Positions 1,115 through 64,000 of a stretch of DNA of 64,000 nt are shown one piece after another; position 1 is the first letter of the stretch; each line of letters starts with the position of its first letter. The stretch spans positions 153,414 to 217,413 of IMG/VR virus record IMGVR_UViG_3300023174_000046; one strand, written 5' to 3'. Below the pieces are notes generated by a model. That model worked only from the letters and a program-made list of their open reading frames with translations. It was not told the DNA's origin and made no database searches. The position numbers and the translations under genes were made by a program.

Positions 1115-1115
1115 C

Positions 1116-3984: not shown

Positions 3985-3987
3985 TAC

Positions 3988-4221
3988 ATGGATATTGAAT
4001 TGTTTGGATGGTTTTCTACATTCTTTCTTTGGGGTGCTGCTCTACCCAAGCAAAGGCATGTATTGCATCTCTGTACAGCCATAGCAGCTTTGTCTCGTGC
4101 GGTCTATATTATAACCTTGTACCTGGGGCCTACAGGTAATCTCGCTAGGCCATTGATAATAAATTGGATAGCGCTATTTGTTATTCACCTATATCAGTAC
4201 TTTGTATATAAAAATAAATAA
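3988..4221 (+). CDS. Small membrane protein
   Basis: Three hydrophobic segments, co-oriented in cluster. Confidence 0.55.
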   Translation: MDIELFGWFSTFFLWGAALPKQRHVLHLCTAIAALSRAVYIITLYLGPTGNLARPLIINWIALFVIHLYQYFVYKNK

Positions 4222-4224
4222 TAA

Positions 4225-4413
4225 ATGGTAAGTTTGAGTGCAATTAACGATTTTTTTGATCTGTCTAAACCATGCCCCTCAGAAATAAAAAGATGTCGAC
4301 AACTTAGAAACGATTACCGACTTGAACTTCGAAATATGAAGCAATGCACAAGCTGTGCAACACGAGTAGTAAAAAACGTTTATATTAATAAAATAAATCA
4401 ATGCTCGAATTAA
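4225..4413 (+). CDS. Small Cys-rich protein (paralog of next ORF)
   Basis: FFD-x3-PCPS-x4-C...CxxC; TAAATA late motif at 4215. Confidence 0.65.
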   Translation: MVSLSAINDFFDLSKPCPSEIKRCRQLRNDYRLELRNMKQCTSCATRVVKNVYINKINQCSN

Positions 4414-4604
4414 CTAAAATAGAAAGGTTTTTTGATATGAATCAGCCTTGCCCGTCAGATATACCTGATTGTGAACAACATAGAAAAGACTATTTAAATA
4501 AATTAGAAGAATTGAAAAAACAAAACGGTTGCAGTCCTTGCAAGATGCGAGGGATCAGAAACCATTATCTTCAAATTATTACAGGAGCGTATGGAGCTAA
4601 GTAA
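4401..4604 (+). CDS. Small Cys-rich protein (paralog of previous ORF)
   Basis: FFDMNQPCPSDIPDC...CSPC. Confidence 0.65.
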   Translation: MLELTKIERFFDMNQPCPSDIPDCEQHRKDYLNKLEELKKQNGCSPCKMRGIRNHYLQIITGAYGAK

Positions 4605-4920
4605 TTTTATAATAGGGTTTTTATCGACAAGTAGTTTACTGCTACTTTGGTTTTATTCTTCTTTAAAGATTACTTTAGCAGAAATCTTTTTTAATGAGAA
4701 AATTACAAATAATGATCAATTTGAAGACTTAATTATGATTCGTCTAAAAAATGAAAAACTATCACATTTATCAAGTTGTTATATTTGCATGAGTTTTTGG
4801 ACATCATTTCTTGTAGGATGTCTTTTAACGTTTTTGGGTAGCCCCAACTATACCCCTGTCATTACATTCTTGACTTACCCCTGCTTGTGTTATATAATGA
4901 AGAAATATGTCTTTGATTGA
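4591..4920 (+). CDS. Membrane protein with CxxC-xx-FW motif (DUF1360-like)
   Basis: Hydrophobic helices and SCYICMSFW. Confidence 0.5.
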   Translation: MELSNFIIGFLSTSSLLLLWFYSSLKITLAEIFFNEKITNNDQFEDLIMIRLKNEKLSHLSSCYICMSFWTSFLVGCLLTFLGSPNYTPVITFLTYPCLCYIMKKYVFD

Positions 4921-5683
4921 TAGCAAAGTGTGTATCCTGGGGGATGGGTTCGTTGGCCAATCTCTAAAGAAAGCACTACAAAAATGTCATGATGTGGTTC
5001 TTCTTGGACCTCAAGAAGTGCCTGTACAGAAGGCTTTTGATGTCTGTTTTATTTGTGTGCCTACAAATAACACAAACAGTGTTACTGATTTATCAAATAT
5101 AGAAGACGCTTTTCACAAGATAAAGAGCAATCTATATATTATTAAGTCTACTGTGCCAGTTGGTACTTGTAAAGAATTGACTGATCGCTTTAAAGTAGAT
5201 ATAGTTTATTGTCCAGAATTTTTAAGTGAATCAACATACCACAATCCAACTAATTGTGCAGGCAATTTACTTGAATGGCCTTTTTTCGTTCTCGGTGGAA
5301 ACAACGGGCCTGTTGATAATGCATATAATTTTTTATTAGAAATTTTTGGTCCCTGCAAGTCTTACTCTTTTGCTACTTTTGAAACTGCAGAGCTTTTTAA
5401 GTACACAATAAATTTATTCTGGACGTTTAAATTATCTTTTTTTAATAGCATATTTGATGTCTGTGCTGATTTTAATGTAGATTACAAAAAATTAAGAGAA
5501 TTGGTACTTTTAGATAAACGTATACACCCGCTTCATACCGCTATTTTTAAAAATAAGAGAGGTTTTAGGGGAAAATGCTTGCCCAAAGATCTTGAATCCT
5601 TTGTATCACAAATAAAAAACAAACAAAGCAAAGATTTATTTGCTATGATTCAGCAATATAATAACCTTTTTATTAAAAAATAA
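4907..5683 (+). CDS. UDP-glucose/GDP-mannose dehydrogenase family protein (lacks C-terminal domain)
   Basis: GDGFVG, ICVPT, KSTVPVG, CPEFL, GFRGKCLPKD. Confidence 0.85.
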   Translation: MSLIDSKVCILGDGFVGQSLKKALQKCHDVVLLGPQEVPVQKAFDVCFICVPTNNTNSVTDLSNIEDAFHKIKSNLYIIKSTVPVGTCKELTDRFKVDIVYCPEFLSESTYHNPTNCAGNLLEWPFFVLGGNNGPVDNAYNFLLEIFGPCKSYSFATFETAELFKYTINLFWTFKLSFFNSIFDVCADFNVDYKKLRELVLLDKRIHPLHTAIFKNKRGFRGKCLPKDLESFVSQIKNKQSKDLFAMIQQYNNLFIKK

Positions 5684-5719
5684 TATTGCATTTCTATCTT
5701 TCCAATTTAATATAACATT

Positions 5720-5920
5720 ATGTTTAAGTACAAAGCGGTGATCAAGGATAACTATTTAACTAAAACAAGAAATAAGTATGTACATGCAGCCAACAGCCTT
5801 GATGCACATAAATTTGCGCTTTATACAGTTAACCTTGCAAAAGAAGACATCATCAAAATTCTAGATGAAGATGGTGGCACGGTTTATTCTGTTGCAAAAG
5901 GTTTCATACATAAGCATTAA
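5720..5920 (+). CDS. Hypothetical protein
   Basis: ORF with plausible composition following a promoter-like AT tract. Confidence 0.55.
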   Translation: MFKYKAVIKDNYLTKTRNKYVHAANSLDAHKFALYTVNLAKEDIIKILDEDGGTVYSVAKGFIHKH

Positions 5921-5923
5921 TAT

Positions 5924-6124
5924 ATGAGCGATGTTGAAATAAATCTTGCTGATCTCAAAGCTGTGGTTGATATCATTAATTTGATGGCATCCCGAGGAGC
6001 CATTAGAGGTCAAGAGCTGGCAGTAATTGGTGGTGTCTATAATAAATATTCATACGTCATTGAAAAAATCAAAGAAAAGCAAGACAGTCCTAGGCCTGGA
6101 GTTGAATCAGATTCAGCGAATTGA
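5924..6124 (+). CDS. Small hypothetical protein of a type seen in T4-like phages
   Basis: DL..II....SRGAI.G.EL..IG.VYNK pattern. Confidence 0.6.
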   Translation: MSDVEINLADLKAVVDIINLMASRGAIRGQELAVIGGVYNKYSYVIEKIKEKQDSPRPGVESDSAN

Positions 6125-6270
6125 TGATAAAAGCGTTGAAGTCAATTTCTCTATTACCCATGATGTTGAAGAGCTTTTTAAAAACGTATACAAGCTCCAT
6201 AAACTTACTGATAAGCAGTTTTGCAAAAAGATCGGTTCTATAATTGTTGAATATGTTGAAGAAAAATTGA

Positions 6271-6483
6271 ATGAAAAGTATAGAGATAGAAGTTAAAGAT
6301 TCTTACAACGACAAACAAAATCTTATTGTCAAAATTGACGGTAAAGAGGTTGGTATCTTATACATTGACGAAGATCAGAAGTTTGATTTACTTAAGATTC
6401 TACGCAGAGGCAAAGATGAAGACACTGAATTAATTGAGCCTCAAGAGCTGGACGACCTTGATGAAGACGGTGAAGAGTATTAA
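6271..6483 (+). CDS. Hypothetical acidic protein
   Basis: ORF track; packs against neighbours. Confidence 0.55.
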   Translation: MKSIEIEVKDSYNDKQNLIVKIDGKEVGILYIDEDQKFDLLKILRRGKDEDTELIEPQELDDLDEDGEEY

Positions 6484-6490
6484 ATAATAA

Positions 6491-7303
6491 GTGTTTAAGT
6501 ATATAGTAGGTTTTTCATCGTTTCTCATAGCATCTATTGCCGCATATTTTTCAATAAAAGGCATATCTTTACTGTTCGCAGGTAGTTTTTGGCCTGTTGT
6601 TTTGATGGCCGGTTCTCTTGAAATTGGCAAGCTTGTTGCAACCAGTAGCTTATATCGGTATTACCATGAATTGAATGGTTTTATTAAAACATACCTATTT
6701 ACTGCTATAGCTGTTTTAATGATTATTACTAGCTTGGGCATATTTGGGTTTTTATCCGATGCATTTTATAGAAGTAAAATCAAGTCAGAAACCATGTCAG
6801 CTAAAGTTACTTTTGCTGAAGAAAAGAAAATTACATTGCAGCAGAAATTTGACTACAATAAAGAAAGAGTCAAAACATTATCAAATATTAGAACATCGCA
6901 AGAGGAGAGACTCTCTTCAACAACCAAACAAAATACAAGTACGCAAAAAAGCGGTCTTTTTGGCACAGACCAATCAATAGATGCAAATGCTCTTAAGAGT
7001 AAAACTAAAATTCTCGAAAACGTAAGTGAAGAAATAAAAACTGCAAACTTACAGATTGATGAGCTTAATAAAGAAAACGGTGGCATAATGAATGAGCTAG
7101 AATCACTCAATTCGCAACTATTAGCGCTTAAACAGAATGAAAGCAAGGAATCAGATATTGGCACTTTCAAGTTTATTGCAAAATCATTTAATCTTGAGTT
7201 GGATGTAGCTGTAAAATACTTCATCATATCACTAGTGTTTGTATTTGACCCATTAGCAGTAATCTTGTTGATAGTTTTTAACTCTCTAATAAAAAAAAAG
7301 TAA
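6491..7303 (+). CDS. Membrane protein (3 N-terminal TM, coiled coil, C-terminal TM); ends at a slippery A-AAA-AAG
   Basis: Hydrophobic N-terminus, SLEIGKLVA, FVFDPLAV; late TAAATA at 6481; GTG start. Confidence 0.8.
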   Translation: MFKYIVGFSSFLIASIAAYFSIKGISLLFAGSFWPVVLMAGSLEIGKLVATSSLYRYYHELNGFIKTYLFTAIAVLMIITSLGIFGFLSDAFYRSKIKSETMSAKVTFAEEKKITLQQKFDYNKERVKTLSNIRTSQEERLSSTTKQNTSTQKSGLFGTDQSIDANALKSKTKILENVSEEIKTANLQIDELNKENGGIMNELESLNSQLLALKQNESKESDIGTFKFIAKSFNLELDVAVKYFIISLVFVFDPLAVILLIVFNSLIKKK

Positions 7304-22430: not shown

Positions 22431-22522
22431 GCGCGGGTGGTGAAACGGCGAAACACATCTGGCTTAAGATCAGATACGGATTAATGATCACACTGTGGGT
22501 TCAAATCCCACCCCGCGTACCA
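22431..22522 (+). tRNA. tRNA-Leu(UAA)
   Basis: GCGCGGG/CCCGCGT acceptor, TCTGG-CTTAAGA-TCAGA anticodon arm, long variable arm, TTCAAAT T-loop, ACCA. Confidence 0.93.
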
Positions 22523-36107: not shown

Positions 36108-37073
36108 CTATAGTATATTTTTATACCATTCTATGGTTTGCTTGAGACCATCTTCAAAGTTAATCTTTGGTTCCCATTTCAGCTCGTTTCGTATCTTGGA
36201 GCTATCAATTGCATATATAAAGTCGTGGCCCTTGCGATCTTCAACAAATTCTATTAAACTGTCTTTGCGTTCAACAATCTCTAAAACCTTTTTTACTAAG
36301 TCTATATTTTTCATAATATCATAGGTTCCTATGTTATAAACTTCACCGCTCTTGCCTTGCTGCAATACAGTTAAAATAGCTCTGCAATGATCTTCTGCAT
36401 GAATCCATTCACGCATGTTGTCACCTTTGCCATAAACAGGTATGGCATGATTGTTAATAGCATTCAATATTGTTTTGGGTAATAGCTTTTCTTTGTGTTG
36501 ATATGGCCCATAGTTATTACTACAACGCGTGACACATACTTCCAGTTTAAACGTCTTGTGATAACTCAATGCAACAAGATCAGCAGAAGCTTTTGATGCT
36601 GAATAAACAGAGCTAGGATTAAGATTTGTTAATTCTGAGAAAAGCGGTTCATCCAAGTTATGCAGTTGACCATATACTTCATCAGTACTAACTTGAATGA
36701 ATTTCTCTACATCATATTTTCTTGAACACTCCAAAAGGTTAAAAGTGCCCACAACATTAGATGATATGAAAGGAGCAGGACCTGTTATGCTGTTATCCAC
36801 ATGTGACTCTGCAGCAATGTTTACTACTAGTTGTGGTTTGATTGCAGCAAAAATAGCATCCATCTTTTGAAAGTTAGATATGTCTTTCTTTATAAACTTT
36901 ATTCTTCTTCGATATTGTTTGTGCTCTTCTAAAAACTTTTTTATGTGTTGTTTCTGAGAAGCATAAGTCTCTGAATCCAGGTTAATAATCTTATAGTCTG
37001 TATTCTCTAATAAATGAATAAGAAAATGCGTGCCTATGAAGCCGTAGCCTCCTGTGACTAATATTTTGGCCAT
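36108..37073 (-). CDS. rmlB: dTDP-glucose 4,6-dehydratase
   Basis: GGYGFIG, AAESHVDNSI, STDEVYG, YSASKAS, NNYGPYQ. Confidence 0.93.
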   Translation of the reverse strand: MAKILVTGGYGFIGTHFLIHLLENTDYKIINLDSETYASQKQHIKKFLEEHKQYRRRIKFIKKDISNFQKMDAIFAAIKPQLVVNIAAESHVDNSITGPAPFISSNVVGTFNLLECSRKYDVEKFIQVSTDEVYGQLHNLDEPLFSELTNLNPSSVYSASKASADLVALSYHKTFKLEVCVTRCSNNYGPYQHKEKLLPKTILNAINNHAIPVYGKGDNMREWIHAEDHCRAILTVLQQGKSGEVYNIGTYDIMKNIDLVKKVLEIVERKDSLIEFVEDRKGHDFIYAIDSSKIRNELKWEPKINFEDGLKQTIEWYKNIL

Positions 37074-37173: not shown

Positions 37174-37268
37174 GCCTCCGTCGTCTAGCGGTCAAGACAC
37201 ACGGCTTATACCCGTGCTCGGCACCAGATTAGTGCATAACGTTGGTTCGAATCCAACCGGAGGTACCA
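37174..37268 (+). tRNA. tRNA-Ile(UAU) with a 24-nt variable region
   Basis: GCCTCCG/CGGAGGT acceptor, CACGG-CTTATAC-CCGTG, GTTGG-TTCGAAT-CCAAC, ACCA. Confidence 0.85.
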
Positions 37269-37273
37269 TTTTT

Positions 37274-37349
37274 GGGCGTATAGCTCAGCGGTTAGAGCAG
37301 GGCACTCATAATGCCTTGGTCCTAGGTTCAAATCCTAGTACGCCCACCA
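37274..37349 (+). tRNA. tRNA-Ile2(CAU), lysidine type (Met less likely)
   Basis: GGGCA-CTCATAA-TGCCT-TGGTC resembles ileX-type tRNAs; CCA encoded. Confidence 0.82.
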
Positions 37350-37351
37350 TT

Positions 37352-37425
37352 GCATCTGTAGCTCAGTTGGACAGAGCAACGGATTTCTAATCCGTGGGTC
37401 ACAGGTTCGATCCCTGTCAGATGCA
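37352..37425 (+). tRNA. tRNA-Arg(UCU), CCA not encoded
   Basis: GCATCTG/CAGATGC acceptor, ACGGA-TTTCTAA-TCCGT. Confidence 0.92.
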
Positions 37426-37427
37426 AG

Positions 37428-40252: not shown

Positions 40253-40614
40253 AAACGTTTAAAGAGTTTTTTATCGAATCAAAGCAAAAGCATTCTAAAC
40301 AAGAGGCGGGTTACGTGGCGCATACTGTTAAAGGTCAAAGATGTGATCAATGTACTATGTGGAGAGCTCCTAATAAATGCTCTGCAGTAGCAGGAGATAT
40401 CAAACCTGAAGCATGGTGCAAGTGGTGGAAGCAAAGCCACAGAAAAGATTTAAAAGAGAAGAGCATACATGATCCTGTAAGGCCTGGTATATTAAAGCGT
40501 CAGACCAAAGGCAAAATGACCTGCTCCAAAGCAAGAAGATTAAGGGCTAAGCAAAAGAATAAAGGTAACAATACAGCTAAAGCAGCTCAACGCTACTTAA
40601 ATTATCACTGTTAA
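40249..40614 (+). CDS. CTS-leader protein with HiPIP-like 4-Cys domain plus a basic module
   Basis: GTG start (M)KTFKEFFIE; CDQC...KC..V.G.I.PEAWC. Confidence 0.7.
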   Translation: MKTFKEFFIESKQKHSKQEAGYVAHTVKGQRCDQCTMWRAPNKCSAVAGDIKPEAWCKWWKQSHRKDLKEKSIHDPVRPGILKRQTKGKMTCSKARRLRAKQKNKGNNTAKAAQRYLNYHC

Positions 40615-41543
40615 GCCCACTGTGCTGTAAACGGCGTTGTGTAGTTTGTAAATGTGTTTGTAGCTGTCTTGTAAAGCTCAAAGCTATTAACTTGTATATA
40701 AGCCTGGTAACCATCATCCACATTGATGAATGTGCCATTAACCACAAACACATCTGCTGTGAGTGCTGGTGAGAACAGTGTCATACCAGCAGTTAGATTA
40801 GCTCTTGCTTGTGTGCTTGTAGCAGCACGAATAGATTCTGTTGCAAGCTTCATTCTTGTACCAATACCAGAAGTTGTTTGAAGCGAAGTTACATAATTAG
40901 CTGTTAAAGCTTTTCTTGTTGTTGTATCATCCCATAGAATTTTATTCAAGACATATTGCTGATAGTTGTTACCTGTACCGTAACCGGCGCCACCGGTACC
41001 AAAAGGAAATACATCACCACTTAATGGTGCAGTACTAGAAAGAGCATTGCTTGCTGTACCATAAACAGCAGGATTTACTAATCTATTCACAGCAACACCA
41101 ACAGCACCGCAAGTGTTTGAAAGTTCATTGCCTTGACCTCTTCTGAGCATGTAACCCAAATAGCCGCTCAAAGAGCATACACCAATATGAGGAGCAGAAA
41201 ATAACATTAATGCACCATTGGTAGCATATTGTATGTGTGAAGCCCATGCAAAGAGTGCAATTCTCCCAGTATGCGGGTAACCACCAATGCCACCTGCAAA
41301 AAATGGTCCTTGAAAATCATTCAAAGTAGCAGGCATTTGACCAATATTGTTATTGTAATAAGCTGGTGCATTTGCATCATCTGAACAAATTGAATCGGCT
41401 AATAAAACATTGTTGGCGCTATACCCACATAATGTTTGAATAAACGTTTTGCAATATCTGCCAAAATCTTCCACAAGAATGGCTCCAGGGTAGGCAGAAG
41501 CTGCTGTTACTATTGAGGTGTATGTTGATTGTGATATTGGCAT
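40611..41543 (-). CDS. LCIB-family (theta-type) carbonic anhydrase-like protein, copy 2
   Basis: ICSDD, GPFFAGGIGGYPHTG, APHIG, RRGQ, TCGA. Confidence 0.8.
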   Translation of the reverse strand: MPISQSTYTSIVTAASAYPGAILVEDFGRYCKTFIQTLCGYSANNVLLADSICSDDANAPAYYNNNIGQMPATLNDFQGPFFAGGIGGYPHTGRIALFAWASHIQYATNGALMLFSAPHIGVCSLSGYLGYMLRRGQGNELSNTCGAVGVAVNRLVNPAVYGTASNALSSTAPLSGDVFPFGTGGAGYGTGNNYQQYVLNKILWDDTTTRKALTANYVTSLQTTSGIGTRMKLATESIRAATSTQARANLTAGMTLFSPALTADVFVVNGTFINVDDGYQAYIQVNSFELYKTATNTFTNYTTPFTAQWA

Positions 41544-41551
41544 AAAAAATA

Positions 41552-42652
41552 TTAGTTGAGTTGTAATCCTGATTTAAATTGTGTAGTAAAGTCTTCGAAG
41601 GTATCTGTGGTCTTGTTGTATCTTAAGAAGTTTGTTACATCTGCATAAGCTTTAAATCCATCATCCACGTTAATAAATGTACCAGTGCTCAAGAACACAT
41701 CAACATTTCTGCCAGGGAACGCTGTTCTATAAGCAAGCTTGAATGTGCTGTTATTGTCAGGTTTAGCAATAATATTGAAAGCAGAGTTGCGAATTGCTTC
41801 TGTGGCCAATATCATTTGCTGCCCGAAGTCTGATGTTGCACAAATGGCTGTGCGTGCTGTTACATCATCATAAATTGCCTTGACAAGAGTATAGAATTGA
41901 AAATCCGATGCATTTGTTAACAATACATCAAGTGGATCAGGGCTAGGCCATTGAGGAGCAGGGCCGCTTACACCATTGTTTCTGATCCAATCAACAGCAG
42001 CTGCTGCAGCACCACAAGTTGCAGAAAGATTACCATAATTTTGACCGCGGCGTCTCATGTAACCTACTTGACCATCGCGAGTGATGCCAATGTGAGGGGC
42101 TATGTACAAGAATAGAGCACCTCCACTTGTGACGTGTGATGCATAAGCAAGGAGCCCTGTGGTACCAGTGTGTGGGTAACCATCTAAGCCGCCACCCATG
42201 AATGGTCCAAGGAAAGTTTGCAATGATTGAGGCATTTGACCGAGATTATTAATATTATTAAACACTGGTCCGTTCACATCATCAGAGCAAATAGATGATG
42301 AAAAGAGAACATTGCTTGGAGTGTAAGCAGCACTTACCGATTGAATATAAGTTTGTACGCGAAGACCAAAGTTTTCAGCTGTTGCAGCAGTTGGGTATGT
42401 CTTTCTTACCACATCACCATAATCAAGTTGTTGCGAAACTGGACCAGAATCAGATGTTAAACTGGAACCATGCATTAAGTTGTTATTCTCTAGTTCTGCA
42501 CGAGCTGCTTGTACTCTTTCTTCTATGATTTGTTGTTCAAATAAGAATTTCTTTTGAAAATCGGCTGATTGTGGCCTGCTAGGCACAACTACGGGGTTGC
42601 GAGGGCGACCATCATATTGCTTTAACCCATCTACATATTGCCTAGGAATCAT
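41552..42652 (-). CDS. LCIB-family (theta-type) carbonic anhydrase-like protein, copy 1, with N-terminal extension
   Basis: ICSDD, GPFMGGGLDGYPHTG, APHIG, RRGQ, TCGA; start MIPRQ 5 nt after TATAAATA. Confidence 0.82.
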   Translation of the reverse strand: MIPRQYVDGLKQYDGRPRNPVVVPSRPQSADFQKKFLFEQQIIEERVQAARAELENNNLMHGSSLTSDSGPVSQQLDYGDVVRKTYPTAATAENFGLRVQTYIQSVSAAYTPSNVLFSSSICSDDVNGPVFNNINNLGQMPQSLQTFLGPFMGGGLDGYPHTGTTGLLAYASHVTSGGALFLYIAPHIGITRDGQVGYMRRRGQNYGNLSATCGAAAAAVDWIRNNGVSGPAPQWPSPDPLDVLLTNASDFQFYTLVKAIYDDVTARTAICATSDFGQQMILATEAIRNSAFNIIAKPDNNSTFKLAYRTAFPGRNVDVFLSTGTFINVDDGFKAYADVTNFLRYNKTTDTFEDFTTQFKSGLQLN

Positions 42653-42657
42653 GTAAT

Positions 42658-42679
42658 TATTTATATTTAACAATAAATA
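42658..42679. promoter_or_regulatory. Back-to-back T4-type late promoters
   Basis: TATAAATA on minus (42658-42665) and TAAATA on plus (42674-42679), each 5-6 nt from an ATG. Confidence 0.75.
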
Positions 42680-57713: not shown

Positions 57714-60086
57714 TTATCCTGGTAAATTCTTAACAACAGTTATATTAGTACCACCTGCTATGCTTTGACCTGCACCAGCAGTCCAGGTGGCATCGCTGGC
57801 TCGAGCATATATTGTACGGCCATTGAGAGTACTTAATGAACCTGCTTCATACACAGTCAATGGAGCAAAGGAACTGATGGTGAGCAAGCTTGTGCAGTTG
57901 TATAAAAACAATCCTCCAATAGATGCAATGCCATTGGGTATGAGTATATTGGTTAAAGACGGGTTTTGTGCAAATGCATAACTGCAAAGGATTGCAGTGC
58001 TAGTGTTTGCTATGTTCACAGCAGTTAATGAGTTTAAATTGAATGCAAATCGACCAACTATGGACACGCTGCCGGGTATGCTCACAGACTTTAACGCATT
58101 GCTTGCAAATGCACCATCACCAATGTATGTTACATTGCTGGGTATATTCACTGCAGACAAATTGTTGCCTTGAAATGCATTGGTACCTATGCTTGTCATA
58201 TTGTTAGGTATAGTTACAGCAGACAATTGATTGTATAAGAATGCACCTATACCTATGCTTGTCATATTGTTAGGTATGTCTACAGCAGACAATTTGTTTT
58301 GTGCAAATGCATAGTCAGGTACAAAATTTATACCAGTCCCCAGTGTAAGGATGGATATATTGTTGCTTTGAAATGCACCTCCACCCATGCTGGTGACAGT
58401 GTCAGGTATGCTCACAGCAGACAATTTGTTGCCGTAGAATGCAAATAAATTAATATTTGTCACGCTGTTGGGTATGGTCACAGCAGACAAATTGTTTAGG
58501 CTAAATGCATAATTTCCTATGGTTGCAACGCTACTGCCCAATGTCAAGAAGGATATGGTGTTGCTTTGAAATGCATAATTGCCAATGGCTGTCACACTGT
58601 TGGGTATGTTCACAGCAGATAATTTCTGGTTATTGAATGTACTTGAGCCAATATATTGCACACTGTTGCCCAGTGTCAAGGAGGATATGTTGTTGCTTTG
58701 AAATGCAGTAGAATCAATATATGTAACTGAGTCTGGTATGTTAACTACAGTTAATTTGTTGTTACCAAATGCATACTCTCCTATGTATGTGACACCATTG
58801 GGTATGGTTGCAGCAGACAAATTGTTGTTGGCAAATGATTGATATGCAATGTTGGTCACACCATTGGGTATGACAATGTCATTCAATCGATTGTCCTTGA
58901 ATGCCTGGTATGATGTGAAGGACAGACCAGTTGGCAGTGTTACAGCAGACAATGCATTGGCAGCAAAAGACAAAGATGCACCAGCTGCACCTTGCTTGGG
59001 CAAACTAACTGCACTCAACTTGTTGTTGGTGCAATACAAGTTTGATATATTCCTACTGCTAGCCACATCCAGGTATGTTAATGCATTGTAATTGCAATTC
59101 ATTTCTTTTAATGCAGAAAGGCTTGACACATCCAGAGATGACAGACTGTTGTAATTCACATAAAGATATTGTATGTTGTTGCATCCTGAAAAATATATGG
59201 AAGAAAGAAGCAATCCTCCTGTTCCAGAGCTGTAATAGCCTTCATAATTATTAACAAAAACACTGATTAGCTTAGGAAGATTGGTGAAAGTAAAAGATGT
59301 GAATTGATTATTTTGCATATAAATAACTTCTAAATCCGTGCATCCAAAAAGATTCACAGATGATAGCCGATTGGATGCAATATTAACAGAGTTTATTTTG
59401 TTGTTGTTGGAAAGATTCAGTGTGGTAAGTTTACCGCCGGGCGCCTGTAAAGATGTTAAGTTCGGAACATTAGTCAGATTGATGGCGGTTAAATTATTGT
59501 TGATACAGTAGAGAGAATGAAGACTGCTGAGACCAGATGCTTGAACAGAAGATAGAACATATTGAAAACCGGCATCATGTTGATAGCTACAATCCAGTAA
59601 CTCTAGTGCAGGCATCTGAGCAGACAGATTGTTCAAAGATGTAAACCAATTAGAATTGCAGTTCAACTGCTTCAGCTTGTGCAAGCCAATGACAGGCAAA
59701 CTTGTAAGTTTATTGCTATTGCAATCTAGTATTTCAACATTTTGCAAATCAAACCCCGTGGTAGGGTCAATTGAATCCCACCCACCCAGCATAGTGGCTA
59801 TTTGCAAATGCTTTACCACTGGTGACAGTATCAGGTCTTCCTGTTCTATGTTATTGTATGACACGTTTAGTTTTGTTGCCAAGGGAAACTGTGTGGCATC
59901 AAAATAATCAAACAAATTGCTGCTCACATCCAGAGTCACAATATTATTTTTACCTGTGATTGCTTGCATCCAGCTGTTCAGCTGACATTCAGCCATGGTC
60001 AAATCCAACTGAGAACAACGGGATGCATCCACACCCTGCATGGGTATTCCTGCAACGTATAACCGGTTAATTTTACCTGTTTTCAT
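57714..60086 (-). CDS. Leucine-rich repeat protein (internalin-type LRR + BspA/LRR_5)
   Basis: L.C..N.L..L repeats then IP.SVT.IG..AF..N.L repeats; in frame with the upstream ORF across one TGA. Confidence 0.88.
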   Translation of the reverse strand: MKTGKINRLYVAGIPMQGVDASRCSQLDLTMAECQLNSWMQAITGKNNIVTLDVSSNLFDYFDATQFPLATKLNVSYNNIEQEDLILSPVVKHLQIATMLGGWDSIDPTTGFDLQNVEILDCNSNKLTSLPVIGLHKLKQLNCNSNWFTSLNNLSAQMPALELLDCSYQHDAGFQYVLSSVQASGLSSLHSLYCINNNLTAINLTNVPNLTSLQAPGGKLTTLNLSNNNKINSVNIASNRLSSVNLFGCTDLEVIYMQNNQFTSFTFTNLPKLISVFVNNYEGYYSSGTGGLLLSSIYFSGCNNIQYLYVNYNSLSSLDVSSLSALKEMNCNYNALTYLDVASSRNISNLYCTNNKLSAVSLPKQGAAGASLSFAANALSAVTLPTGLSFTSYQAFKDNRLNDIVIPNGVTNIAYQSFANNNLSAATIPNGVTYIGEYAFGNNKLTVVNIPDSVTYIDSTAFQSNNISSLTLGNSVQYIGSSTFNNQKLSAVNIPNSVTAIGNYAFQSNTISFLTLGSSVATIGNYAFSLNNLSAVTIPNSVTNINLFAFYGNKLSAVSIPDTVTSMGGGAFQSNNISILTLGTGINFVPDYAFAQNKLSAVDIPNNMTSIGIGAFLYNQLSAVTIPNNMTSIGTNAFQGNNLSAVNIPSNVTYIGDGAFASNALKSVSIPGSVSIVGRFAFNLNSLTAVNIANTSTAILCSYAFAQNPSLTNILIPNGIASIGGLFLYNCTSLLTISSFAPLTVYEAGSLSTLNGRTIYARASDATWTAGAGQSIAGGTNITVVKNLPG

Positions 60087-60089
60087 GTG

Positions 60090-60596
60090 TCAAATGCCTC
60101 CATTCACATCACAGGATGTCACTTGCACCAAGCGCGGTGCAGCATATGGATCATCTGGTGCAATGTAGTGTTCAAAATATAACTCATCACCAGGGACACC
60201 TGAGCCAATGACTTCAGATGTGCCATCCCAATATTGCACAAATGCATACCCCGTGGATGTGTATACATATGCATATACATATTGACCTGGATCAACATTG
60301 TAATACAAAGACACAGTCTCTGCCACAATAGGTGCGGCAGGACTGCCTGGATCTGCTCCAATGCCTTCTGCCACATCTGCATGCGACATGTGACCATGTG
60401 TGTGTTCCTCCAGCTCATGTCTGGCCTCTTGAATCATCTTCATTTGTTGCTGTTGATCAAAAGCCATGCTATCATTGATCATTCTTTTCTGTTGTTGATT
60501 GGGACGAGCAGGGCGCCAAGTATATGTGTCTGGGGGGTAGTTAACTGTTCTGCCGGGATCGGTGAGCGCATTTAAATAATCATCAAACCAGTCCAT
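60090..60596 (-). CDS. MDWFDDYL leader module + N-terminal part of the LRR protein
   Basis: N-terminus duplicates 56635..57705; late TAAATA. Confidence 0.7.
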   Translation of the reverse strand: MDWFDDYLNALTDPGRTVNYPPDTYTWRPARPNQQQKRMINDSMAFDQQQQMKMIQEARHELEEHTHGHMSHADVAEGIGADPGSPAAPIVAETVSLYYNVDPGQYVYAYVYTSTGYAFVQYWDGTSEVIGSGVPGDELYFEHYIAPDDPYAAPRLVQVTSCDVNGGI

Positions 60597-60834
60597 ATCT
60601 AATTATTTATGAATAAATAAAATAAAAATAGGCTGGAGCTTGAGTGAATAATCACATATAATAACAACATGCCCAAGAAGAAAGTAACATTAAGAACGGT
60701 GAGAGAGCTGGGTAAAAGGATTGCAAAGAACAAGCCTTTTGTAGGTGAATGCATTGACCGAACTTCTGGTAAAATCATTAATTTGGACGGTCGGCTTGTG
60801 AGAAAATTAGGAAAGAAATCTAAATAATATTGAT

Positions 60835-61347
60835 ATGGTTAATGATAGTCACTTGATATTTGAAAATTATGTGGATGGCATCTCCAAAAGAAAAGGTGAG
60901 CTGGCCGGAAACATCATGGACATTGTGAGATACGGTATTCCTTCCAAAGAAGAGTTTATTAAGATCAGACAAGAACTGCATGACAAAACAAAAGAAATTT
61001 TAGACAGAGGTACTCCTGCAACAGAAGAAGAGAAACACCGAGGCAGGCAGTTGATAGGCATGATAAGATCCTACAGAGCTCAACATCCCAATGATCCTCC
61101 TGTGGCTAAAAACCTGCATCATGCAGAAGAGAGTGCAGAAAATACACAGCCTGCAGATGTATCCAATGAAATCAGAATCAAATTGGGACAAGCCTATAAT
61201 ATAGTCAAAGGTTTAATTGAGCTGCTGGACAAGACACCCTCAGAACAAACACCATACAATGAGATGGCCATAACCCATCTGGCCAATCTGGAGGAAGATT
61301 TAAAAGAATTATCCATGATGCTTCAAGACAGAATGCTGGGTAAATAA
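60835..61347 (+). CDS. Putative internal head protein (LIFE leader)
   Basis: MVNDSHLIFENY; EESAEN linker; TAAATA 60821. Confidence 0.65.
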   Translation: MVNDSHLIFENYVDGISKRKGELAGNIMDIVRYGIPSKEEFIKIRQELHDKTKEILDRGTPATEEEKHRGRQLIGMIRSYRAQHPNDPPVAKNLHHAEESAENTQPADVSNEIRIKLGQAYNIVKGLIELLDKTPSEQTPYNEMAITHLANLEEDLKELSMMLQDRMLGK

Positions 61348-61352
61348 TTGAT

Positions 61353-62225
61353 ATGAGAAAAGATGATCATTTGATATTTGAATCTTTTATTAATAAGAAA
61401 GGTGATGCTGGCGTTGGTCGGCCGGCTTCAGAAGAAGAAATTAACGTTAGTAAAGCTGATCTGAACAAGGATAAACAATTGAGTGATTATGAATTGGCCC
61501 GGGCTAAAGCCATGGACAAAGCCATGCACAAAGATGAACAAGCAGAGAGCAAGTCTACAGGCCGAGGTGCAGTGAATGACATAGTGGTTTCAGAGTTGCA
61601 TAAGATACATACAGCATTGAATCAGATGTCTAGCATGATTGATTTAAATCCTAGTGCAGAGGTGGATCAATTGTTATCTAAGATAAGGGATGTGGCTGAT
61701 ATGCTAATTGCAGAAAGGCCTGCAGAGAATGAAGAGAGTGCGGATGAAAGAAAAGAGCGGGTACAAAGAGGATGGGATATAAACAAGAAGAGATGGGCTA
61801 AATGGAAGATGGAGAATCCAGAGGCTGCTGCTAAACATGCTGCAAAGAAAGCTACTGGTAAAGAAGAGAGTGCAGAGAATGAACCACATGGTTATCCTCA
61901 GGGAATGACAGCTATTCAGAACTTGTTGTTAAATGAATTGAAGAAGTATGGCTTTGAATTAACAAGAATTAGTCATACAGATAAAGAGAGAGACAAGTAC
62001 CCAACGGTATTCATGCATAATAAGAGTGGACCGATGCATAGGGTAGTAGAGATTAGCGGTATGGGTGAGATCAATGGTGAGCCTTATAAGAAGTATCTGG
62101 CTGATTTAAAAGAGAAAATCAAACGTTTATCTGGTATAAGACCTGAAAATCCAGAAGATCCTTATTATGATACATGGCAGAGCATTGCTCAAGATCATGC
62201 TGGTGAAGAAGAAGAAGATTGCTAG
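61353..62225 (+). CDS. Modular putative internal head protein (LIFE leader)
   Basis: MRKDDHLIFESF; EQAE, ENEESADE, EESAENE linkers; ADLNKDKQLSDYE. Confidence 0.65.
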   Translation: MRKDDHLIFESFINKKGDAGVGRPASEEEINVSKADLNKDKQLSDYELARAKAMDKAMHKDEQAESKSTGRGAVNDIVVSELHKIHTALNQMSSMIDLNPSAEVDQLLSKIRDVADMLIAERPAENEESADERKERVQRGWDINKKRWAKWKMENPEAAAKHAAKKATGKEESAENEPHGYPQGMTAIQNLLLNELKKYGFELTRISHTDKERDKYPTVFMHNKSGPMHRVVEISGMGEINGEPYKKYLADLKEKIKRLSGIRPENPEDPYYDTWQSIAQDHAGEEEEDC

Positions 62226-62412
62226 ACAGTATAAAAAGCAGTTGTTTTGCCAAAAAGCACACGTAAAATTACAAAAAGCATAGTGTATTCTGCAAAACTA
62301 TGATGCTTTATCTGAAGAGATATAGTAGATCATAACAAGAAACATGCCGGAAATACAGAAATACCGATAAAAAGAAGTTGACTATTACGGAGACTCAGCC
62401 ATAATAATAGGC

Positions 62413-62745
62413 ATGATCACTTATACAGGCTACAAACAATACCCACAACCTACTGATAACGATAACGCACACCCTTTACTACCCAATGCACCTATAGGCC
62501 TACCCCTAGAAACCATCATGTCGCTATCAGAAGATACCAGACAGCTGTATGATCTGATATACGATTACTGTACCTATGCTAGTGACCCCCAATACCAGAC
62601 ACTCCACAAGTTCCGTAACCGGATAGCTCGCATAGAGAATACCGTTGAACGGGATATACTCATTGCTTACTTTAATAACGATCCTGCTATTAAATGGAAT
62701 GGCATGACAGAGGCACCTTACGAATACTATGCTAAGCCTTACTAA
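62413..62745 (+). CDS. Hypothetical early protein (C-rich coding strand)
   Basis: TTGACT-16-CATAAT-7-ATG. Confidence 0.6.
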   Translation: MITYTGYKQYPQPTDNDNAHPLLPNAPIGLPLETIMSLSEDTRQLYDLIYDYCTYASDPQYQTLHKFRNRIARIENTVERDILIAYFNNDPAIKWNGMTEAPYEYYAKPY

Positions 62746-62817
62746 ACGTGAGACGACTATTATCCCCGTTTGGTTATTATCCTTGACTCGTATTATACGT
62801 ACACATATAATATACAC

Positions 62818-63102
62818 ATGAGCCCGGCAGCAGACATTGAGTGGATTCAGCAAGAAGTACTCAATCAAGTGGATGTTGTTGTGGAGCAGTTTACTGTATA
62901 CGATCCACACAAACTACTAGACCTTAGCAAGGTGATTGTTAGTTCCATTATAGATAAGATTGATGTGGCCCATGTACTTGGCATGTACTATCATATAGCA
63001 GCAACTAAGGATACTGTGTCTGCACCTGAAGACCGTCTACAGTGTGTGTATGATCATTTTAATGAATGGGTGGAATTAGAACTGGCCAAACGGTATGCTT
63101 AA
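62818..63102 (+). CDS. Hypothetical early protein
   Basis: TTGACT...TATAAT-6-ATG 62818. Confidence 0.55.
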   Translation: MSPAADIEWIQQEVLNQVDVVVEQFTVYDPHKLLDLSKVIVSSIIDKIDVAHVLGMYYHIAATKDTVSAPEDRLQCVYDHFNEWVELELAKRYA

Positions 63103-63343
63103 TGTGGCTATTGATGTGTTGTGTGCTGGCATCATACCCTTCTTCTTTGTTTGCTTTGGCATCATTTGGTTTGTATTTAAGATTATAGATATTTTTAAGA
63201 AGAAGTAAAGCTTCTGTAACTCCTTCATTTTGGAGGTTTGCTAAATGGTTGATCTCCCCTACCATACTGTAACTACTTGATACTACAATTGTATTTGTAG
63301 TTTGTTGATTCACAACAATCCAACCACCCTTCATACTCAACAC

Positions 63344-63357
63344 CTTTACGCGTAAAG
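63344..63357. other. Perfect 14-bp palindrome CTTTACGCGTAAAG near the C/G skew switch
   Basis: Read directly. Confidence 0.7.
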
Positions 63358-63503
63358 TAGCGGTCCAGAGCCCCCCTCTCCTCTCTTAATTTTCAAGATG
63401 GTTCCGCTTTCCCTAACTTATCCATATAGTATAAAGGAATTGCAGATTTGGTCAATATGTATTTTGTTGTTGTGTTGAAGCAAACTTCCCATATAATATA
63501 AGA

Positions 63504-63674
63504 ATGAAAATTAATAAAAATGAATTGAAGGTGGGTTACATATTTGAAGGTGGTGAGGGTAGTGATGAAATTGTAGTGCATATTGATAAAGATGATGGGA
63601 TGGTTTATTGTAGGCATTTAGAGGAAGATGGTAACAGATATAAAATTGAAAGGGATGGTAGTATTAAAGTTTGA
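63504..63674 (+). CDS. 56-aa protein with C-depleted coding strand (below ORF-track cutoff)
   Basis: MKINKNELKVGYIFEGGEGSDEIVVHIDKDDGMVYCRHLEEDGNRYKIERDGSIKV; 4 C in 171 nt. Confidence 0.6.
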   Translation: MKINKNELKVGYIFEGGEGSDEIVVHIDKDDGMVYCRHLEEDGNRYKIERDGSIKV

Positions 63675-63676
63675 GG

Positions 63677-63705
63677 TTGACAAAATATTAAATTACAGAT
63701 ATAAT
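63677..63705 (+). promoter_or_regulatory. Perfect sigma70 consensus promoter
   Basis: TTGACA-N17-TATAAT, ATG 6 nt later. Confidence 0.9.
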
Positions 63706-63711
63706 ATAAAA

Positions 63712-64000
63712 ATGAAAATTAATAATAGAGAATTGAATAAGAAAGTTAGGGAATTGTTTGTTAAGAAATTGAATATGGAAGGTTATGATGGTAGTGTTAA
63801 AGTTAAATGTAATTGTGAGAGGTATAATAATGAATTGTGTAATGGTTATAAGATTGTGTGGAAGAGTTATGGATGGTTTGGATATGAAAAGGTTTGGAGA
63901 TATATTGTAGAAGAAATTAATAAAATTGATAGTGGTTGGGTATTGTTAGAAAGTGCAAGTTGGAGGGGAGATGGTAATGTGTGGGGAATGAGTAAAGAAT
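63712..64000 (+). CDS. Early protein with nearly C-free coding strand (3'-truncated)
   Basis: MKINNRELNKKVRELFVKK...; one C in 289 nt. Confidence 0.7.
   Translation, partial: MKINNRELNKKVRELFVKKLNMEGYDGSVKVKCNCERYNNELCNGYKIVWKSYGWFGYEKVWRYIVEEINKIDSGWVLLESASWRGDGNVWGMSKE

What the first reader, a model, noticed from the sequence alone, without database searches (positions are those of the whole stretch)
63491..64000. Early genes written almost without cytosine on the coding strand
Seen: 63491-64000 has only 7 C on the + strand (63539, 63579, 63615, 63635, 63681, 63696, 63956), and 63697-63955 (259 nt) has none while G is abundant. The region holds two ORFs (MKINKNEL..., MKINNREL...). The second sits behind a perfect TTGACA-17-TATAAT promoter and has no Pro, Gln, His or Thr and a single Ala in the visible 96 codons. 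Logic: a strand lacking C cannot contain any G/C-bearing palindromic restriction site, and its mRNA needs almost no CTP. Inference: these may be first-expressed anti-defence genes built to escape restriction enzymes, CTP depletion or viperin-type ddhCTP chain termination, or C-containing RNase sites such as MazF ACA. A neutral alternative is heavy deamination of a persistently single-stranded strand at an origin or terminus.
Basis: partly seen in the sequence, partly recalled or inferred. Interest (0 to 1): 0.85.

Follow-up and report, generated by a model that had tools for sequence, protein, structure and literature searches.

The report
Cytosine-free early phage gene cassettes
A freshwater T4-like phage, and at least two unrelated phages, carry small, very strongly promoted genes whose messenger RNA has essentially no cytosine, so their proteins lack five amino acids; the feature is real, conserved and selected, but the host process it evades is not yet known.

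Summary
Window 63491-64000 has 7 C in 510 nt and a 259-nt C-free run (next longest 63; shuffles at most 77). The window ends at the end of a 217-kb metagenomic contig of a distant T4-like myovirus. Relatives show a C-free block of 0.7-1.5 kb, made of 2-6 small genes, each with its own sigma-70-type promoter and an ATG 6-7 nt after the -10 box.

C-lessness belongs to the gene, not to its position. At least six unrelated protein families have 0-1% C wherever they sit. Homologs down to 59% identity keep 0-3 C per ~310 nt. Variable alignment columns show 56 A/G against 0 C/T. Ala+Pro+Thr+Gln+His make up 1.1% of residues against 24%. Remote homologs with normal composition exist, and two unrelated phage lineages have their own C-free blocks.

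The C-free unit runs from the -10 box to the stop codon, while promoter spacers keep C. This points to selection on the RNA. It argues against deamination decay, restriction escape of a first-injected end, and R-loops.

The agent is unresolved. I rank Rho termination first, then C-requiring RNases and CTP limitation. No precedent was found.

The parts
63308..63387 (+). C-rich, G-poor non-coding tract just upstream of the block. It contains the longest G-free run of the window (63308-63349) and is rut-like in composition.
   Evidence: 42-nt G-free run, the longest in the window. C minus G = +24 per 80 nt, third highest in the window, about 4 sd above the mean; relatives also have C>G in the 300 nt upstream of their arrays.
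63492..63497 (+). -10 box TATAAT of cassette 1. The -35 is poor (TTGTTG/GTTGTG). The ATG follows after 6 nt (ATAAGA), so +1 is about the A of the ATG.
   Evidence: sequence; 121 of 147 unique array promoters have the ATG 6-7 nt after the -10 box.
63504..63674 (+). ORF1, 56 aa (MKINKNEL...), acidic, with 4 C in 171 nt. It belongs to C-less family 1.
   Evidence: The family has 23 unique variants with 2.0% C.
63677..63705 (+). Perfect sigma-70-type promoter TTGACA-17-TATAAT of cassette 2. It holds two of the seven C. Its -35 box begins 2 nt after the ORF1 stop codon.
   Evidence: 12 of 12 matches; 78% of 12/12 promoters in these arrays drive C-less ORFs.
63712..64000 (+). ORF2 (MKINNREL...), the first 96 codons of a 104-aa protein of C-less family 0, cut by the contig end. 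It has 1 C in 289 nt.
   Evidence: Full length is seen in L002 5747-6061. Thirty-five metagenome loci carry homologs with 0-3 C.
63491..64000 (+). Visible part of the C-free block. In near-identical L002 it continues to about 6060 in locus coordinates, followed by genes with 5-16% C. In other relatives the block is 0.7-1.5 kb.
62783..63102 (+). Contrast, not part of the block: a gene with the same promoter-then-ATG layout (TTGACT-17-TATAAT, 6 nt, ATG at 62818) but normal C content.
   Evidence: this family (the 94-aa anchor gene) has 19.1% C, and 70% of its variable columns include C.

Best explanation
Shown:
- These are real protein-coding cassette genes in the early-type, host-polymerase-transcribed array of a T4-like phage.
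- Each has a consensus sigma-70-type promoter with the start codon 6-7 nt after the -10 box.
- Cytosine is excluded from the -10 box to the stop codon.
- The exclusion has been maintained through long divergence. It overrides protein composition, recurs in unrelated gene families and unrelated phages, and is strongest behind the best promoters.

Inferred: selection acts on the transcript. The mRNA must contain no cytidine so that it offers nothing to a cytidine-dependent host process during the first moments of infection.

My first choice for that process is Rho-dependent termination. Rho loads on C-rich, G-poor, unstructured RNA that ribosomes do not cover. A burst of transcripts from very strong promoters in a cell whose ribosomes are still busy with host mRNA is the kind of RNA that Rho aborts. 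A C-free, G-enriched transcript cannot serve as a loading site, so these first genes are completed whether or not translation keeps pace. G replaces part of the lost C and keeps G+C from collapsing.

The confidence given is for the whole chain including Rho. Selection on the RNA against C by itself I hold at about 0.8.
For: Coding is real. ORFs of 56-104 codons occur in sequence where stop codons make up about 11.6% of random triplets (composition). The chance of 104 open codons is about 3e-6 (my arithmetic). Length and frame are kept in homologs of 59-100% identity.

Selection against C:
- Family 0 has 139 variable columns: 56 A/G-only, 0 C/T-only, and 4% with any C. Family 3 has 21 against 0.
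- Flanking normal genes have 40 A/G-only against 33 C/T-only columns (35 against 26 in the second gene), and 59-70% of their variable columns include C.
- A+P+T+Q+H are 1.1% against 24.1%. Leu, Arg and Ser use only UUR, AGR and AGU.

Gene-specific, not positional: the 83-aa family has 0.0% C at offsets of 25 to 1249 nt. The L016 homolog has 0.6% C between genes with 9-11% C.

Not required by the fold: remote homologs range from 0% to 20% A+P+T+Q+H. The L066 homolog has 17% C. L063 and L065 have their own three-gene C-free blocks with other promoter types.

Transcript-unit boundaries: C is 11-16% in promoter spacers, 0.0% in the -10 box and the next 10 nt, and 0.0-0.8% over the next 150 nt. ORFs have 0.64% C against 5.1% between ORFs.

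Not motif-specific: NAC, NTC and NGC codons are equally depleted in the intermediate genes.

Expression: 78% of 12/12 promoters drive C-less ORFs against 16-23% of weaker ones. No terminators were found. Contigs from an RNA library cover only 63296-64000 of the 3.5 kb laid.

Rho-specific pointers, all weak:
- Rut sites are C>G-biased (abstract of PMC13650167).
- Rho silences foreign and prophage DNA (PMC12360218).
- Rho restricts T4 transcription to immediate-early RNA in vitro, and polarity appears when translation fails (PMC2988021).
- None of the 54 residual C follows a pyrimidine. After de-replication this is NTC 0/173 against NAC 7/298, p=0.05.
- A C-rich, G-free tract sits just upstream of the array.
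- Third-position G doubles.
Against: - Rho needs many C. Near-zero tolerance (0-3 C per gene, no C/T polymorphism) is more than Rho avoidance obviously requires.
- In some arrays (L006, L018), genes with C>G windows precede the C-free block, and C>G windows return soon after it. The array as a whole is therefore not rut-free.
- Translated ORFs are normally shielded from Rho.
- If Rho were the agent, the trait should be common in model phages, yet no cultured phage matched and no description was found.
- The pyrimidine-C signal is marginal once redundancy and the genetic code are allowed for.
- The host is unknown. Some phyla, for example cyanobacteria, lack Rho (established knowledge).
- No direct evidence of timing or of transcription start sites exists. 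The RNA-library coverage could be carried-over DNA of a multi-strain region.
Confidence: 0.3

Rival explanations
1. The mRNAs are proof against endoribonucleases. Removing every C makes them uncuttable by the many toxin and abortive-infection RNases whose sites contain C. The products, perhaps antitoxin-like or anti-defence proteins, can then be made after such nucleases are unleashed.
For: - The constraint is near zero-tolerance, gene-specific, and runs exactly from the start of the transcript to the stop codon.
- All C contexts are depleted equally, as expected if many different sites must be avoided.
- Most sequence-specific toxin RNases have C in their site, and ACA-less mRNAs are known to resist MazF (PMC5408214).
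- The start codon at +1 would also make translation independent of a Shine-Dalgarno pairing.
Against: - ACA is the commonest residual context (26 of 54 C), so E. coli-type MazF is not the agent.
- A-rich and U-rich cutters (ToxN, RNase E; established knowledge) would find these RNAs excellent substrates.
- This idea does not explain the link to promoter strength or the doubling of third-position G.
- Such nucleases would also destroy all later, C-containing phage mRNAs unless the C-free genes neutralise them, and that is untested.
Confidence: 0.18
2. The design is independent of CTP. CTP is the scarcest NTP, or is depleted or poisoned at infection. Transcripts without C can be made at full speed in starved cells or during a pool collapse caused by phage or host, and each C would be a stall or chain-termination point.
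For: - Every C counts equally and the constraint is near zero-tolerance.
- It is strongest behind the strongest promoters, where nucleotide demand is highest.
- Depletion is graded in the following genes.
Against: - The first C comes 9 nt after the ORF1 stop codon, in the next -35 box. Polymerase stalled there would bury the stop codon, so strict absence of CTP would not give released protein (inference).
- The rest of the phage needs CTP.
- The host polymerase must already tolerate the host's own ddhCTP (inference).
- No known defence depletes CTP, and none was found.
Confidence: 0.15
3. The mRNA is kept unstructured for immediate translation. Without C there are no G-C pairs, so the message stays open for 5'-end (leaderless) initiation and fast elongation, possibly in cold lakes.
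For: - Predicted folding energy is about -10 kcal/mol per 150 nt, against -28.7 +/- 8.3 for the rest of the window.
- The ATG is at +1 in 82% of cassettes.
Against: - Only the first tens of nucleotides matter for initiation, yet whole genes are C-free.
- Neighbouring genes with the same leaderless layout tolerate 6-15% C.
- The C-free blocks in L063 and L065 have ordinary leaders with Shine-Dalgarno sites.
- Raising G, which pairs with U, instead of A works against minimal structure.
Confidence: 0.1
4. Restriction avoidance at the DNA level. A strand without C cannot carry any site that holds both G and C, so the genes cannot be cut before their products act.
For: - The logic is correct for nearly all type I-III sites.
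- Early-injected regions are known to decide sensitivity to restriction (PMC12455610 and PMC10644984, abstracts).
Against: - Promoter spacers inside the block keep 11-16% C.
- The block is 0.3-0.7% of a genome of more than 200 kb with normal composition.
- It lies in mid-array in the 229.7-kb relative.
- T4-type packaging gives no fixed first end (established knowledge; portal and gp15).
- Partial, context-blind depletion in the neighbouring genes is useless against site-specific enzymes.
Confidence: 0.06
5. Avoidance of G in the template strand. If the virion DNA carries a modified guanine that host polymerase reads poorly, the first genes avoid G in the template, which appears as no C in the RNA.
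For: This gives the same strand asymmetry and the same transcript-unit boundaries. Nothing seen here contradicts it.
Against: - No modification genes were found among the 49 window ORFs scanned. This covers only 30% of the genome.
- Known 7-deazaguanine modifications do not touch the pairing face (established knowledge).
- All later genes have G in their templates.
Confidence: 0.04
6. Neutral decay. Transcription-associated or single-strand deamination of C on the non-template strand of very highly transcribed genes, or at an origin or terminus.
For: The bias starts at the promoter, and the strongest promoters have the least C.
Against: - T rises only from 28.8% to 31.9%, while third-position G rises from 14.9% to 31.2% and A falls.
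- The spacers, which are read through, keep C.
- Adjacent genes downstream of the same promoters have 6-15% C.
- The ORFs stay intact, although C-to-T changes create stop codons.
- The state is stable across 59-100% identity and arose in separate lineages.
Confidence: 0.04
7. R-loop or G-quadruplex element. Extreme GC skew makes the transcript stay hybridised to the template, for example to prime replication as at T4 origins.
For: GC skew reaches 0.98. The block follows a non-coding region, which carries direct repeats in L063.
Against: - G is dispersed: GG odds are 0.63-0.85, and there is no excess of G4 motifs over shuffles in 5 of 6 blocks.
- The block is made of conserved, interchangeable ORFs.
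- Total absence of C is not needed for R-loops.
Confidence: 0.03

Closest known systems
T4-type early-promoter cassettes in hyperplastic regions (PeSLs; PMC2839356, PMC4122927)
   Same: Arrays of small genes of unknown function, each with its own strong host-type early promoter. Genes are gained, lost and swapped cassette by cassette between close relatives. The phage is T4-like.
   Different: There is no stem-loop or terminator half. The start codon is fused to the promoter 6-7 nt after the -10 box. A subset of cassettes excludes cytosine altogether, which I could not find described for PeSLs (searches found nothing).
Rho utilisation sites and phage anti-termination (lambda N, P4 Psu; PMC12360218, PMC11718236, PMC2988021)
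   Same: Both address the same problem: getting early phage transcripts past Rho, which needs C-rich, G-poor RNA. The composition here is the exact opposite of a rut site.
   Different: The known solutions are proteins or RNA elements that modify polymerase or inhibit Rho. Here the proposed solution is the base composition of the message itself. No involvement of Rho has been demonstrated.
ACA-less mRNAs resistant to MazF (PMC5408214)
   Same: A message escapes a sequence-specific RNase because it lacks the site, achieved by synonymous and conservative recoding.
   Different: Here a whole nucleotide is avoided, not a triplet, and ACA is the commonest surviving C context. The amino-acid alphabet shrinks to about 15 letters.
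Restriction-site-poor early-injected regions (T5 first-step-transfer DNA, T7-like leading ends; PMC10644984, PMC12455610)
   Same: Sequence avoidance is concentrated in the genes expressed first.
   Different: Those regions avoid particular sites in a fixed leading end of the DNA. Here the unit is the transcript, the spacers keep C, and there is no evidence for a fixed end.
C-less and G-less cassettes used as in vitro transcription templates (laboratory tool; my own knowledge)
   Same: A template is transcribed to full length without one NTP, and polymerase halts at the first occurrence of the missing base.
   Different: Those are artificial and non-coding. These are natural, conserved, protein-coding genes.
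Virus base composition shaped by host factors (CpG avoidance and ZAP, APOBEC footprints; my own knowledge)
   Same: Nucleotide-level pressure from the host is visible in viral sequence and affects coding.
   Different: Those are genome-wide and partial. This is gene-specific and near absolute, and it is not a deamination footprint.

Membership tests
T4-type early-gene cassette array (PeSL-type hyperplastic region) | The phage belongs to the T4 superfamily (core genes present). | tested here: met
   Portal_T4 with E=4e-100. T4 gp15 tail-sheath stabiliser with E=3e-19. The portal is 35% identical to cyanomyovirus portals.
T4-type early-gene cassette array (PeSL-type hyperplastic region) | Each small ORF is preceded by a strong sigma-70-type early promoter, all on one strand. 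| tested here: met
   Eight 11-12/12 matches on the + strand in 3.5 kb of L018. TTGAC-N-TAnAAT occurs only on the + strand in all arrays.
T4-type early-gene cassette array (PeSL-type hyperplastic region) | Cassette-wise presence or absence and reordering between close relatives. | tested here: met
   The same gene families occur in different numbers and orders in L002-L021.
T4-type early-gene cassette array (PeSL-type hyperplastic region) | A stem-loop (terminator) half of the composite motif. | tested here: not met
   No terminator-like sites within the arrays. Stop codons abut or overlap the next -35 box.
Rho-insensitive transcript (anti-rut composition) | C-poor, with G in excess of C along the transcript. 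| tested here: met
   0.6% C and 30.5% G in C-less ORFs. GC skew is 0.98.
Rho-insensitive transcript (anti-rut composition) | Absence of pyrimidine-C dinucleotides, the ligand of Rho's primary site. | tested here: inconclusive
   None of the 54 residual C follows T or C. After de-replication and allowing for the genetic code this is only NTC 0/173 against NAC 7/298, p=0.05, and there is no difference in the intermediate genes.
Rho-insensitive transcript (anti-rut composition) | The host has Rho, and Rho terminates a C-containing version. | not testable with these tools
   The host was not identified. A bench test is needed.
MazF-resistant ACA-less mRNA | The ACA triplet is absent. | tested here: not met
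   ACA is the commonest residual C context (26 of 54) and is common in the intermediate genes.
Restriction-site-free first-injected region | It lies at a fixed genome end that enters first. | tested here: not met
   It is internal and in mid-array in the 229.7-kb contig. The contig break in the window coincides with a 10-50-fold rise in depth from many strains. True termini were not mapped.
Restriction-site-free first-injected region | The avoidance applies to the DNA as such, non-transcribed parts included. | tested here: not met
   Promoter spacers have 11-16% C, against 0.0-0.8% from the -10 box onwards.
Transcription- or single-strand-associated deamination skew | The lost C reappears as T. 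| tested here: not met
   T goes from 28.8% to 31.9% and G from 20.8% to 30.5%. At third positions G goes from 14.9% to 31.2%.
Early (pre-replicative) gene class | Transcribed in the first minutes of infection. | not testable with these tools
   Only indirect evidence is available: consensus host promoters and presence in RNA-library contigs.

The most novel reading that the evidence does not exclude
Several unrelated aquatic phages run a 'three-letter' immediate-early programme. A handful of genes are written without cytosine so that they can be transcribed and translated while cytidine is unavailable or under attack. Either a still-unknown, widespread host response acts on C in RNA or on the CTP pool, or the phage itself imposes a C-directed shut-off that only these genes survive. 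The shared family-0 protein would then be part of the switch that ends that phase.
Probability: 0.25. Interest if true: 0.95.

Novelty: categorically new. Interest (0 to 1): 0.85.

Why it matters
Natural protein-coding genes that exclude one of the four nucleotides, and therefore build folded proteins from about 15 amino acids, were not found in any source I could search. The constraint is maintained by selection in several phage lineages, so it points to a strong cytidine-dependent step at the very start of infection.

Two outcomes are possible. One is that a universal factor such as Rho matters more for phage takeover than is now appreciated. The other is that there is an unrecognised host defence or phage shut-off acting on C in RNA or on CTP.

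The question is directly testable by recoding, because the same protein can be written with or without C. C-free cassettes with a promoter-fused start codon are also ready-made parts for expression that is insensitive to Rho, to C-site RNases or to CTP supply. They are also natural examples of proteins built from a reduced amino-acid alphabet.

Tried and rejected
- Cultured relatives: megablast of the last 3 kb and tblastn of the family-0 protein against 50,697 phage records found nothing.
- A tblastn hit of remote homolog P0023 to cyanophage 'cytidyltransferase' genes concerns a different, C-terminal domain next to head genes. I dropped it.
- Function of the C-less proteins: there were no Pfam or PHROG matches. 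The AlphaFold model (pLDDT 75) had no PDB or BFVD match at E<0.001. Atlas scores were 0.68 or lower, below the noise level.
- Host identification: the carbonic-anhydrase gene had no close relative in genomes. The sugar dehydratase gene hit many phyla at 42-50% identity. The host remains unknown.
- Number of origins of the C-less state: the family-0 tree is too poorly resolved. Only 3 of 19 inner branches are supported, and at least 2 changes are forced.
- The 'gradient from an end' idea was rejected, because C content follows gene family rather than distance.
- The idea that the whole array is rut-free was rejected, because C>G windows recur after the block and in some arrays before it.
- A link to leaderless layout was rejected as the cause. 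Eighty-two percent of cassettes have that layout whatever their C content, and L063 and L065 have ordinary leaders.
- Rfam gave no match in 60000-64000.
- G-quadruplex or R-loop: no excess was found.
- I did not scan collections for long C-free runs, because the pattern would have been a long run of one repeated letter.
- Literature: four searches for a prior description found none.
Full report
**1. The observation**

The window as a whole has 17.3% C. Positions 63697-63955 form a 259-nt run without C. The next longest C-free run in 64 kb is 63 nt, and 200 shuffles never exceeded 77. No other 150-nt stretch has 6 C or fewer, and there is no comparable G-free stretch.

ORF1 (63504-63674, 56 aa) and ORF2 (from 63712) are as described. 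TTGACA-17-TATAAT at 63677-63705 is a perfect consensus. Of the seven C, two are in that promoter, three are forced by His, His and Ala codons, and two are synonymous.

**2. Where it comes from**

The window is the last 64 kb of a 217,413-bp lake-metagenome contig and ends where the contig ends. The phage has a T4-type portal (E=4e-100) and a T4 gp15 homolog. Its portal is only 35% identical to cyanomyovirus portals. No cultured phage matches the region.

The same DNA occurs in independent assemblies and runs. In one DNA run the summed contig depth jumps 10-50-fold over 63191-64000 because many strains share these cassettes. Several other contigs also break within about 1 kb of this gene. The contig end is therefore most simply an assembly break in a hypervariable region, not a genome terminus.

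**3. The real extent**

Near-identical L002 continues the sequence. ORF2 is 104 aa. The following small genes have 5-16% C, each with its own TTGAC-N-TATAAT promoter. About 50 related loci show the same picture. A block of 0.7-1.5 kb holds 2-6 genes with 0-1% C, inside an array of small + strand genes without terminators.

In 121 of 147 unique promoters the first ATG lies 6-7 nt after the -10 box, so the A of the ATG is about +1.

**4. A property of genes, not of place**

The 83-aa family has 0.0% C whether it starts 25 or 1249 nt into the array. In the 229.7-kb relative the family-0 homolog (70% identical, 0.6% C) sits in mid-array between genes with 9-11% C. At least six unrelated protein families are C-less.

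The neighbouring families each have their own characteristic intermediate level of 5-15% C. Because gene order is largely conserved, this looks like a gradient.

**5. It is selected**

- Family-0 homologs from 35 metagenome contigs, 59-100% identical, all have 0-3 C in about 310 nt.
- Of 139 variable nucleotide columns, 56 are A/G-only, none is C/T-only, and 4% contain any C. The 83-aa family gives 21 against 0.
- The two normal genes just upstream give 40 against 33 and 35 against 26, and 59-70% of their variable columns contain C.
- Ala+Pro+Thr+Gln+His make up 1.1% of residues against 24.1% in the phage's other proteins.
- Leu, Arg and Ser use only UUR, AGR and AGU, and NNC codons are almost absent.

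The ORFs are real. In this composition about 11.6% of random triplets are stops, so 104 open codons have a chance of about 3e-6 (arithmetic). Frame and length are conserved.

**6. The fold does not demand it, and other phages do the same**

A profile search of 1.8 billion representatives found 28 relatives. Their share of the five 'C-only' amino acids runs from 0% to 20%.

- The locus of P0017 (L066) has a homolog with 17% C among normal genes.
- The locus of P0013 (L063) has 43.5% G+C and a different promoter and leader with a Shine-Dalgarno site. It has three consecutive genes with 0, 1 and 0 C and 35-40% G, flanked by genes with 15-24% C.
- L065 has three genes with 1, 0 and 2 C behind extended -10 promoters.

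These loci share only the family-0 homolog with the T4-like phages. A second family has a C-less member in L065 (1.1% C) and a normal member in L066 (15.1% C). The tree is too weak to count origins.

**7. What the constraint applies to**

I aligned 61 unique promoter-plus-gene segments at the -10 box. C is 11-16% in the promoter spacer, 0.0% in the -10 box and the next 10 nt, and 0.0-0.8% over the next 150 nt. Upstream of the -35 box, which is the end of the previous ORF, C is 2.3%. Overall, ORFs have 0.64% C and the stretches between them 5.1%.

The C-free unit is therefore the transcript from its start to the stop codon. The surviving C are at functional promoter positions or in a few Thr, Ala and His codons.

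In the intermediate genes C is depleted equally after A, T or G, so no particular motif is being avoided. Perfect 12/12 promoters drive C-less ORFs in 78% of cases, against 16-23% for weaker ones (homologs are not independent).

**8. What this excludes**

- Deamination decay. T rises by 3 points while third-position G doubles and A falls. Spacers keep C, neighbours behind similar promoters keep C, and the ORFs stay intact.
- Restriction escape of a leading end. The unit is the transcript, the block can lie in mid-array, and T4-type phages package permuted DNA (established knowledge).
- MazF-type ACA avoidance. ACA is the commonest surviving context.
- R-loop or G-quadruplex. G is dispersed and GG is under-represented.
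- Leaderless translation as the cause. The layout is shared by C-containing cassettes, and L063 and L065 have ordinary leaders.
- Low RNA structure is a consequence of the composition (-10 against -28.7 kcal/mol per 150 nt). As a goal it explains neither whole-gene exclusion nor the G enrichment.

**9. What remains**

The remaining explanation is an RNA-level agent for which every C is a liability. I rank the candidates as follows.

*Rho first (0.30).*
- It is nearly universal and requires C-rich, G-poor RNA (abstract of PMC13650167).
- It silences foreign DNA (PMC12360218).
- It limits T4 early transcription when translation lags (PMC2988021).
- A C-rich tract containing the longest G-free run of the window lies just upstream of the array.
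- No residual C follows a pyrimidine, although this signal is marginal after de-replication.
- Against it: near zero-tolerance is more than Rho should need, the array is not rut-free overall, the host is unknown, and the trait should then be common.

*C-site endoribonucleases (0.18) and CTP limitation or chain terminators (0.15).* Both fit the near zero-tolerance better, but they lack a known agent in this setting.

Selection on the RNA against C, whatever the agent, I hold at about 0.8.

**10. Function and precedent**

The proteins match no family or fold, so 'anti-defence' is a guess. Contigs from an RNA library cover only 63296-64000 of the 3.5 kb laid. This is compatible with strong expression but is not proof. 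Four literature searches found no description of cytosine-free genes in phages. The closest known context is the T4-type early-promoter cassette (PMC2839356, PMC4122927).

Noticed in passing
window 63492-63506 and 63700-63714; L002-L062 arrays: In 121 of 147 unique array promoters the start codon lies 6-7 nt after the -10 box, so transcripts should begin at the A of the ATG (leaderless). In many cassettes those 6 nt are AGGAGG or AGGAGT, a Shine-Dalgarno sequence that would be present only in read-through RNA from the upstream promoter, followed by ATGATG.
   Followed up: partly
window 63308-63387: C-rich, G-poor non-coding tract containing the longest G-free run of the window, just upstream of the C-free block. 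Relatives also have C>G in the 300 nt before their arrays. It could be a Rho loading site that insulates the array from upstream transcription.
   Followed up: partly
window 22431-22522, 37174-37426: Four phage tRNA genes: Leu(UAA), Ile(UAU), Met(CAU) and Arg(UCU). All read codons that contain no C (UUR, AUA, AUG, AGR), the same codons on which the C-free genes depend.
   Followed up: no
window 63191-64000 (reads): Summed contig depth in DNA run X4 rises from about 20-70 to 200-1200 over the block. Many contigs of other samples end within about 1 kb after the family-0 gene. The cassettes are shared, nearly unchanged, by many co-occurring strains.
   Followed up: partly
window 40614-41543 and 41555-42673 (- strand): Two adjacent genes for LCIB/LCIC-type beta-carbonic anhydrases, unusual auxiliary genes for a phage. 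No close relative was found in 185,579 species genomes.
   Followed up: partly
window 428-7300 and 36111-37073: A sugar and secondary-metabolism set: PIG-L deacetylase, PhyH-type dioxygenase, tryptophan halogenase (1892-3307), UDP-glucose/GDP-mannose dehydrogenase, and a sugar-nucleotide dehydratase/epimerase gene (matches Pfam GDP_Man_Dehyd).
   Followed up: no
window 57717-60086 (- strand): A 790-aa protein made of BspA-type leucine-rich repeats (E=4e-96), next to a lectin-fold protein. It is probably a host-recognition fibre.
   Followed up: no
L063 4110-4190: Direct repeats (gtcgcacacac..cgtacgtaacaag, twice, plus a degenerate third) in the 330-nt non-coding region just upstream of that phage's C-free block. 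Their function is unknown.
   Followed up: no
promoter spacers, e.g. window 63696; L018 9265-9293: A C about 4-5 nt upstream of the -10 box (TTaCAGATATAAT, TTTCAAATATAAT, TTCCCATATAAT) survives even in the most C-poor lineages. The 3' half of the spacer is C-rich (16-34%) in all promoter classes, so it is probably a functional promoter element.
   Followed up: partly
window 63785-63910 and equivalents (L012 2778-2903, L005 10092-10220): Alternative-frame ORFs of 40-50 codons recur inside the C-free genes. ORF lists pick them up, but they are probably not genes.
   Followed up: no
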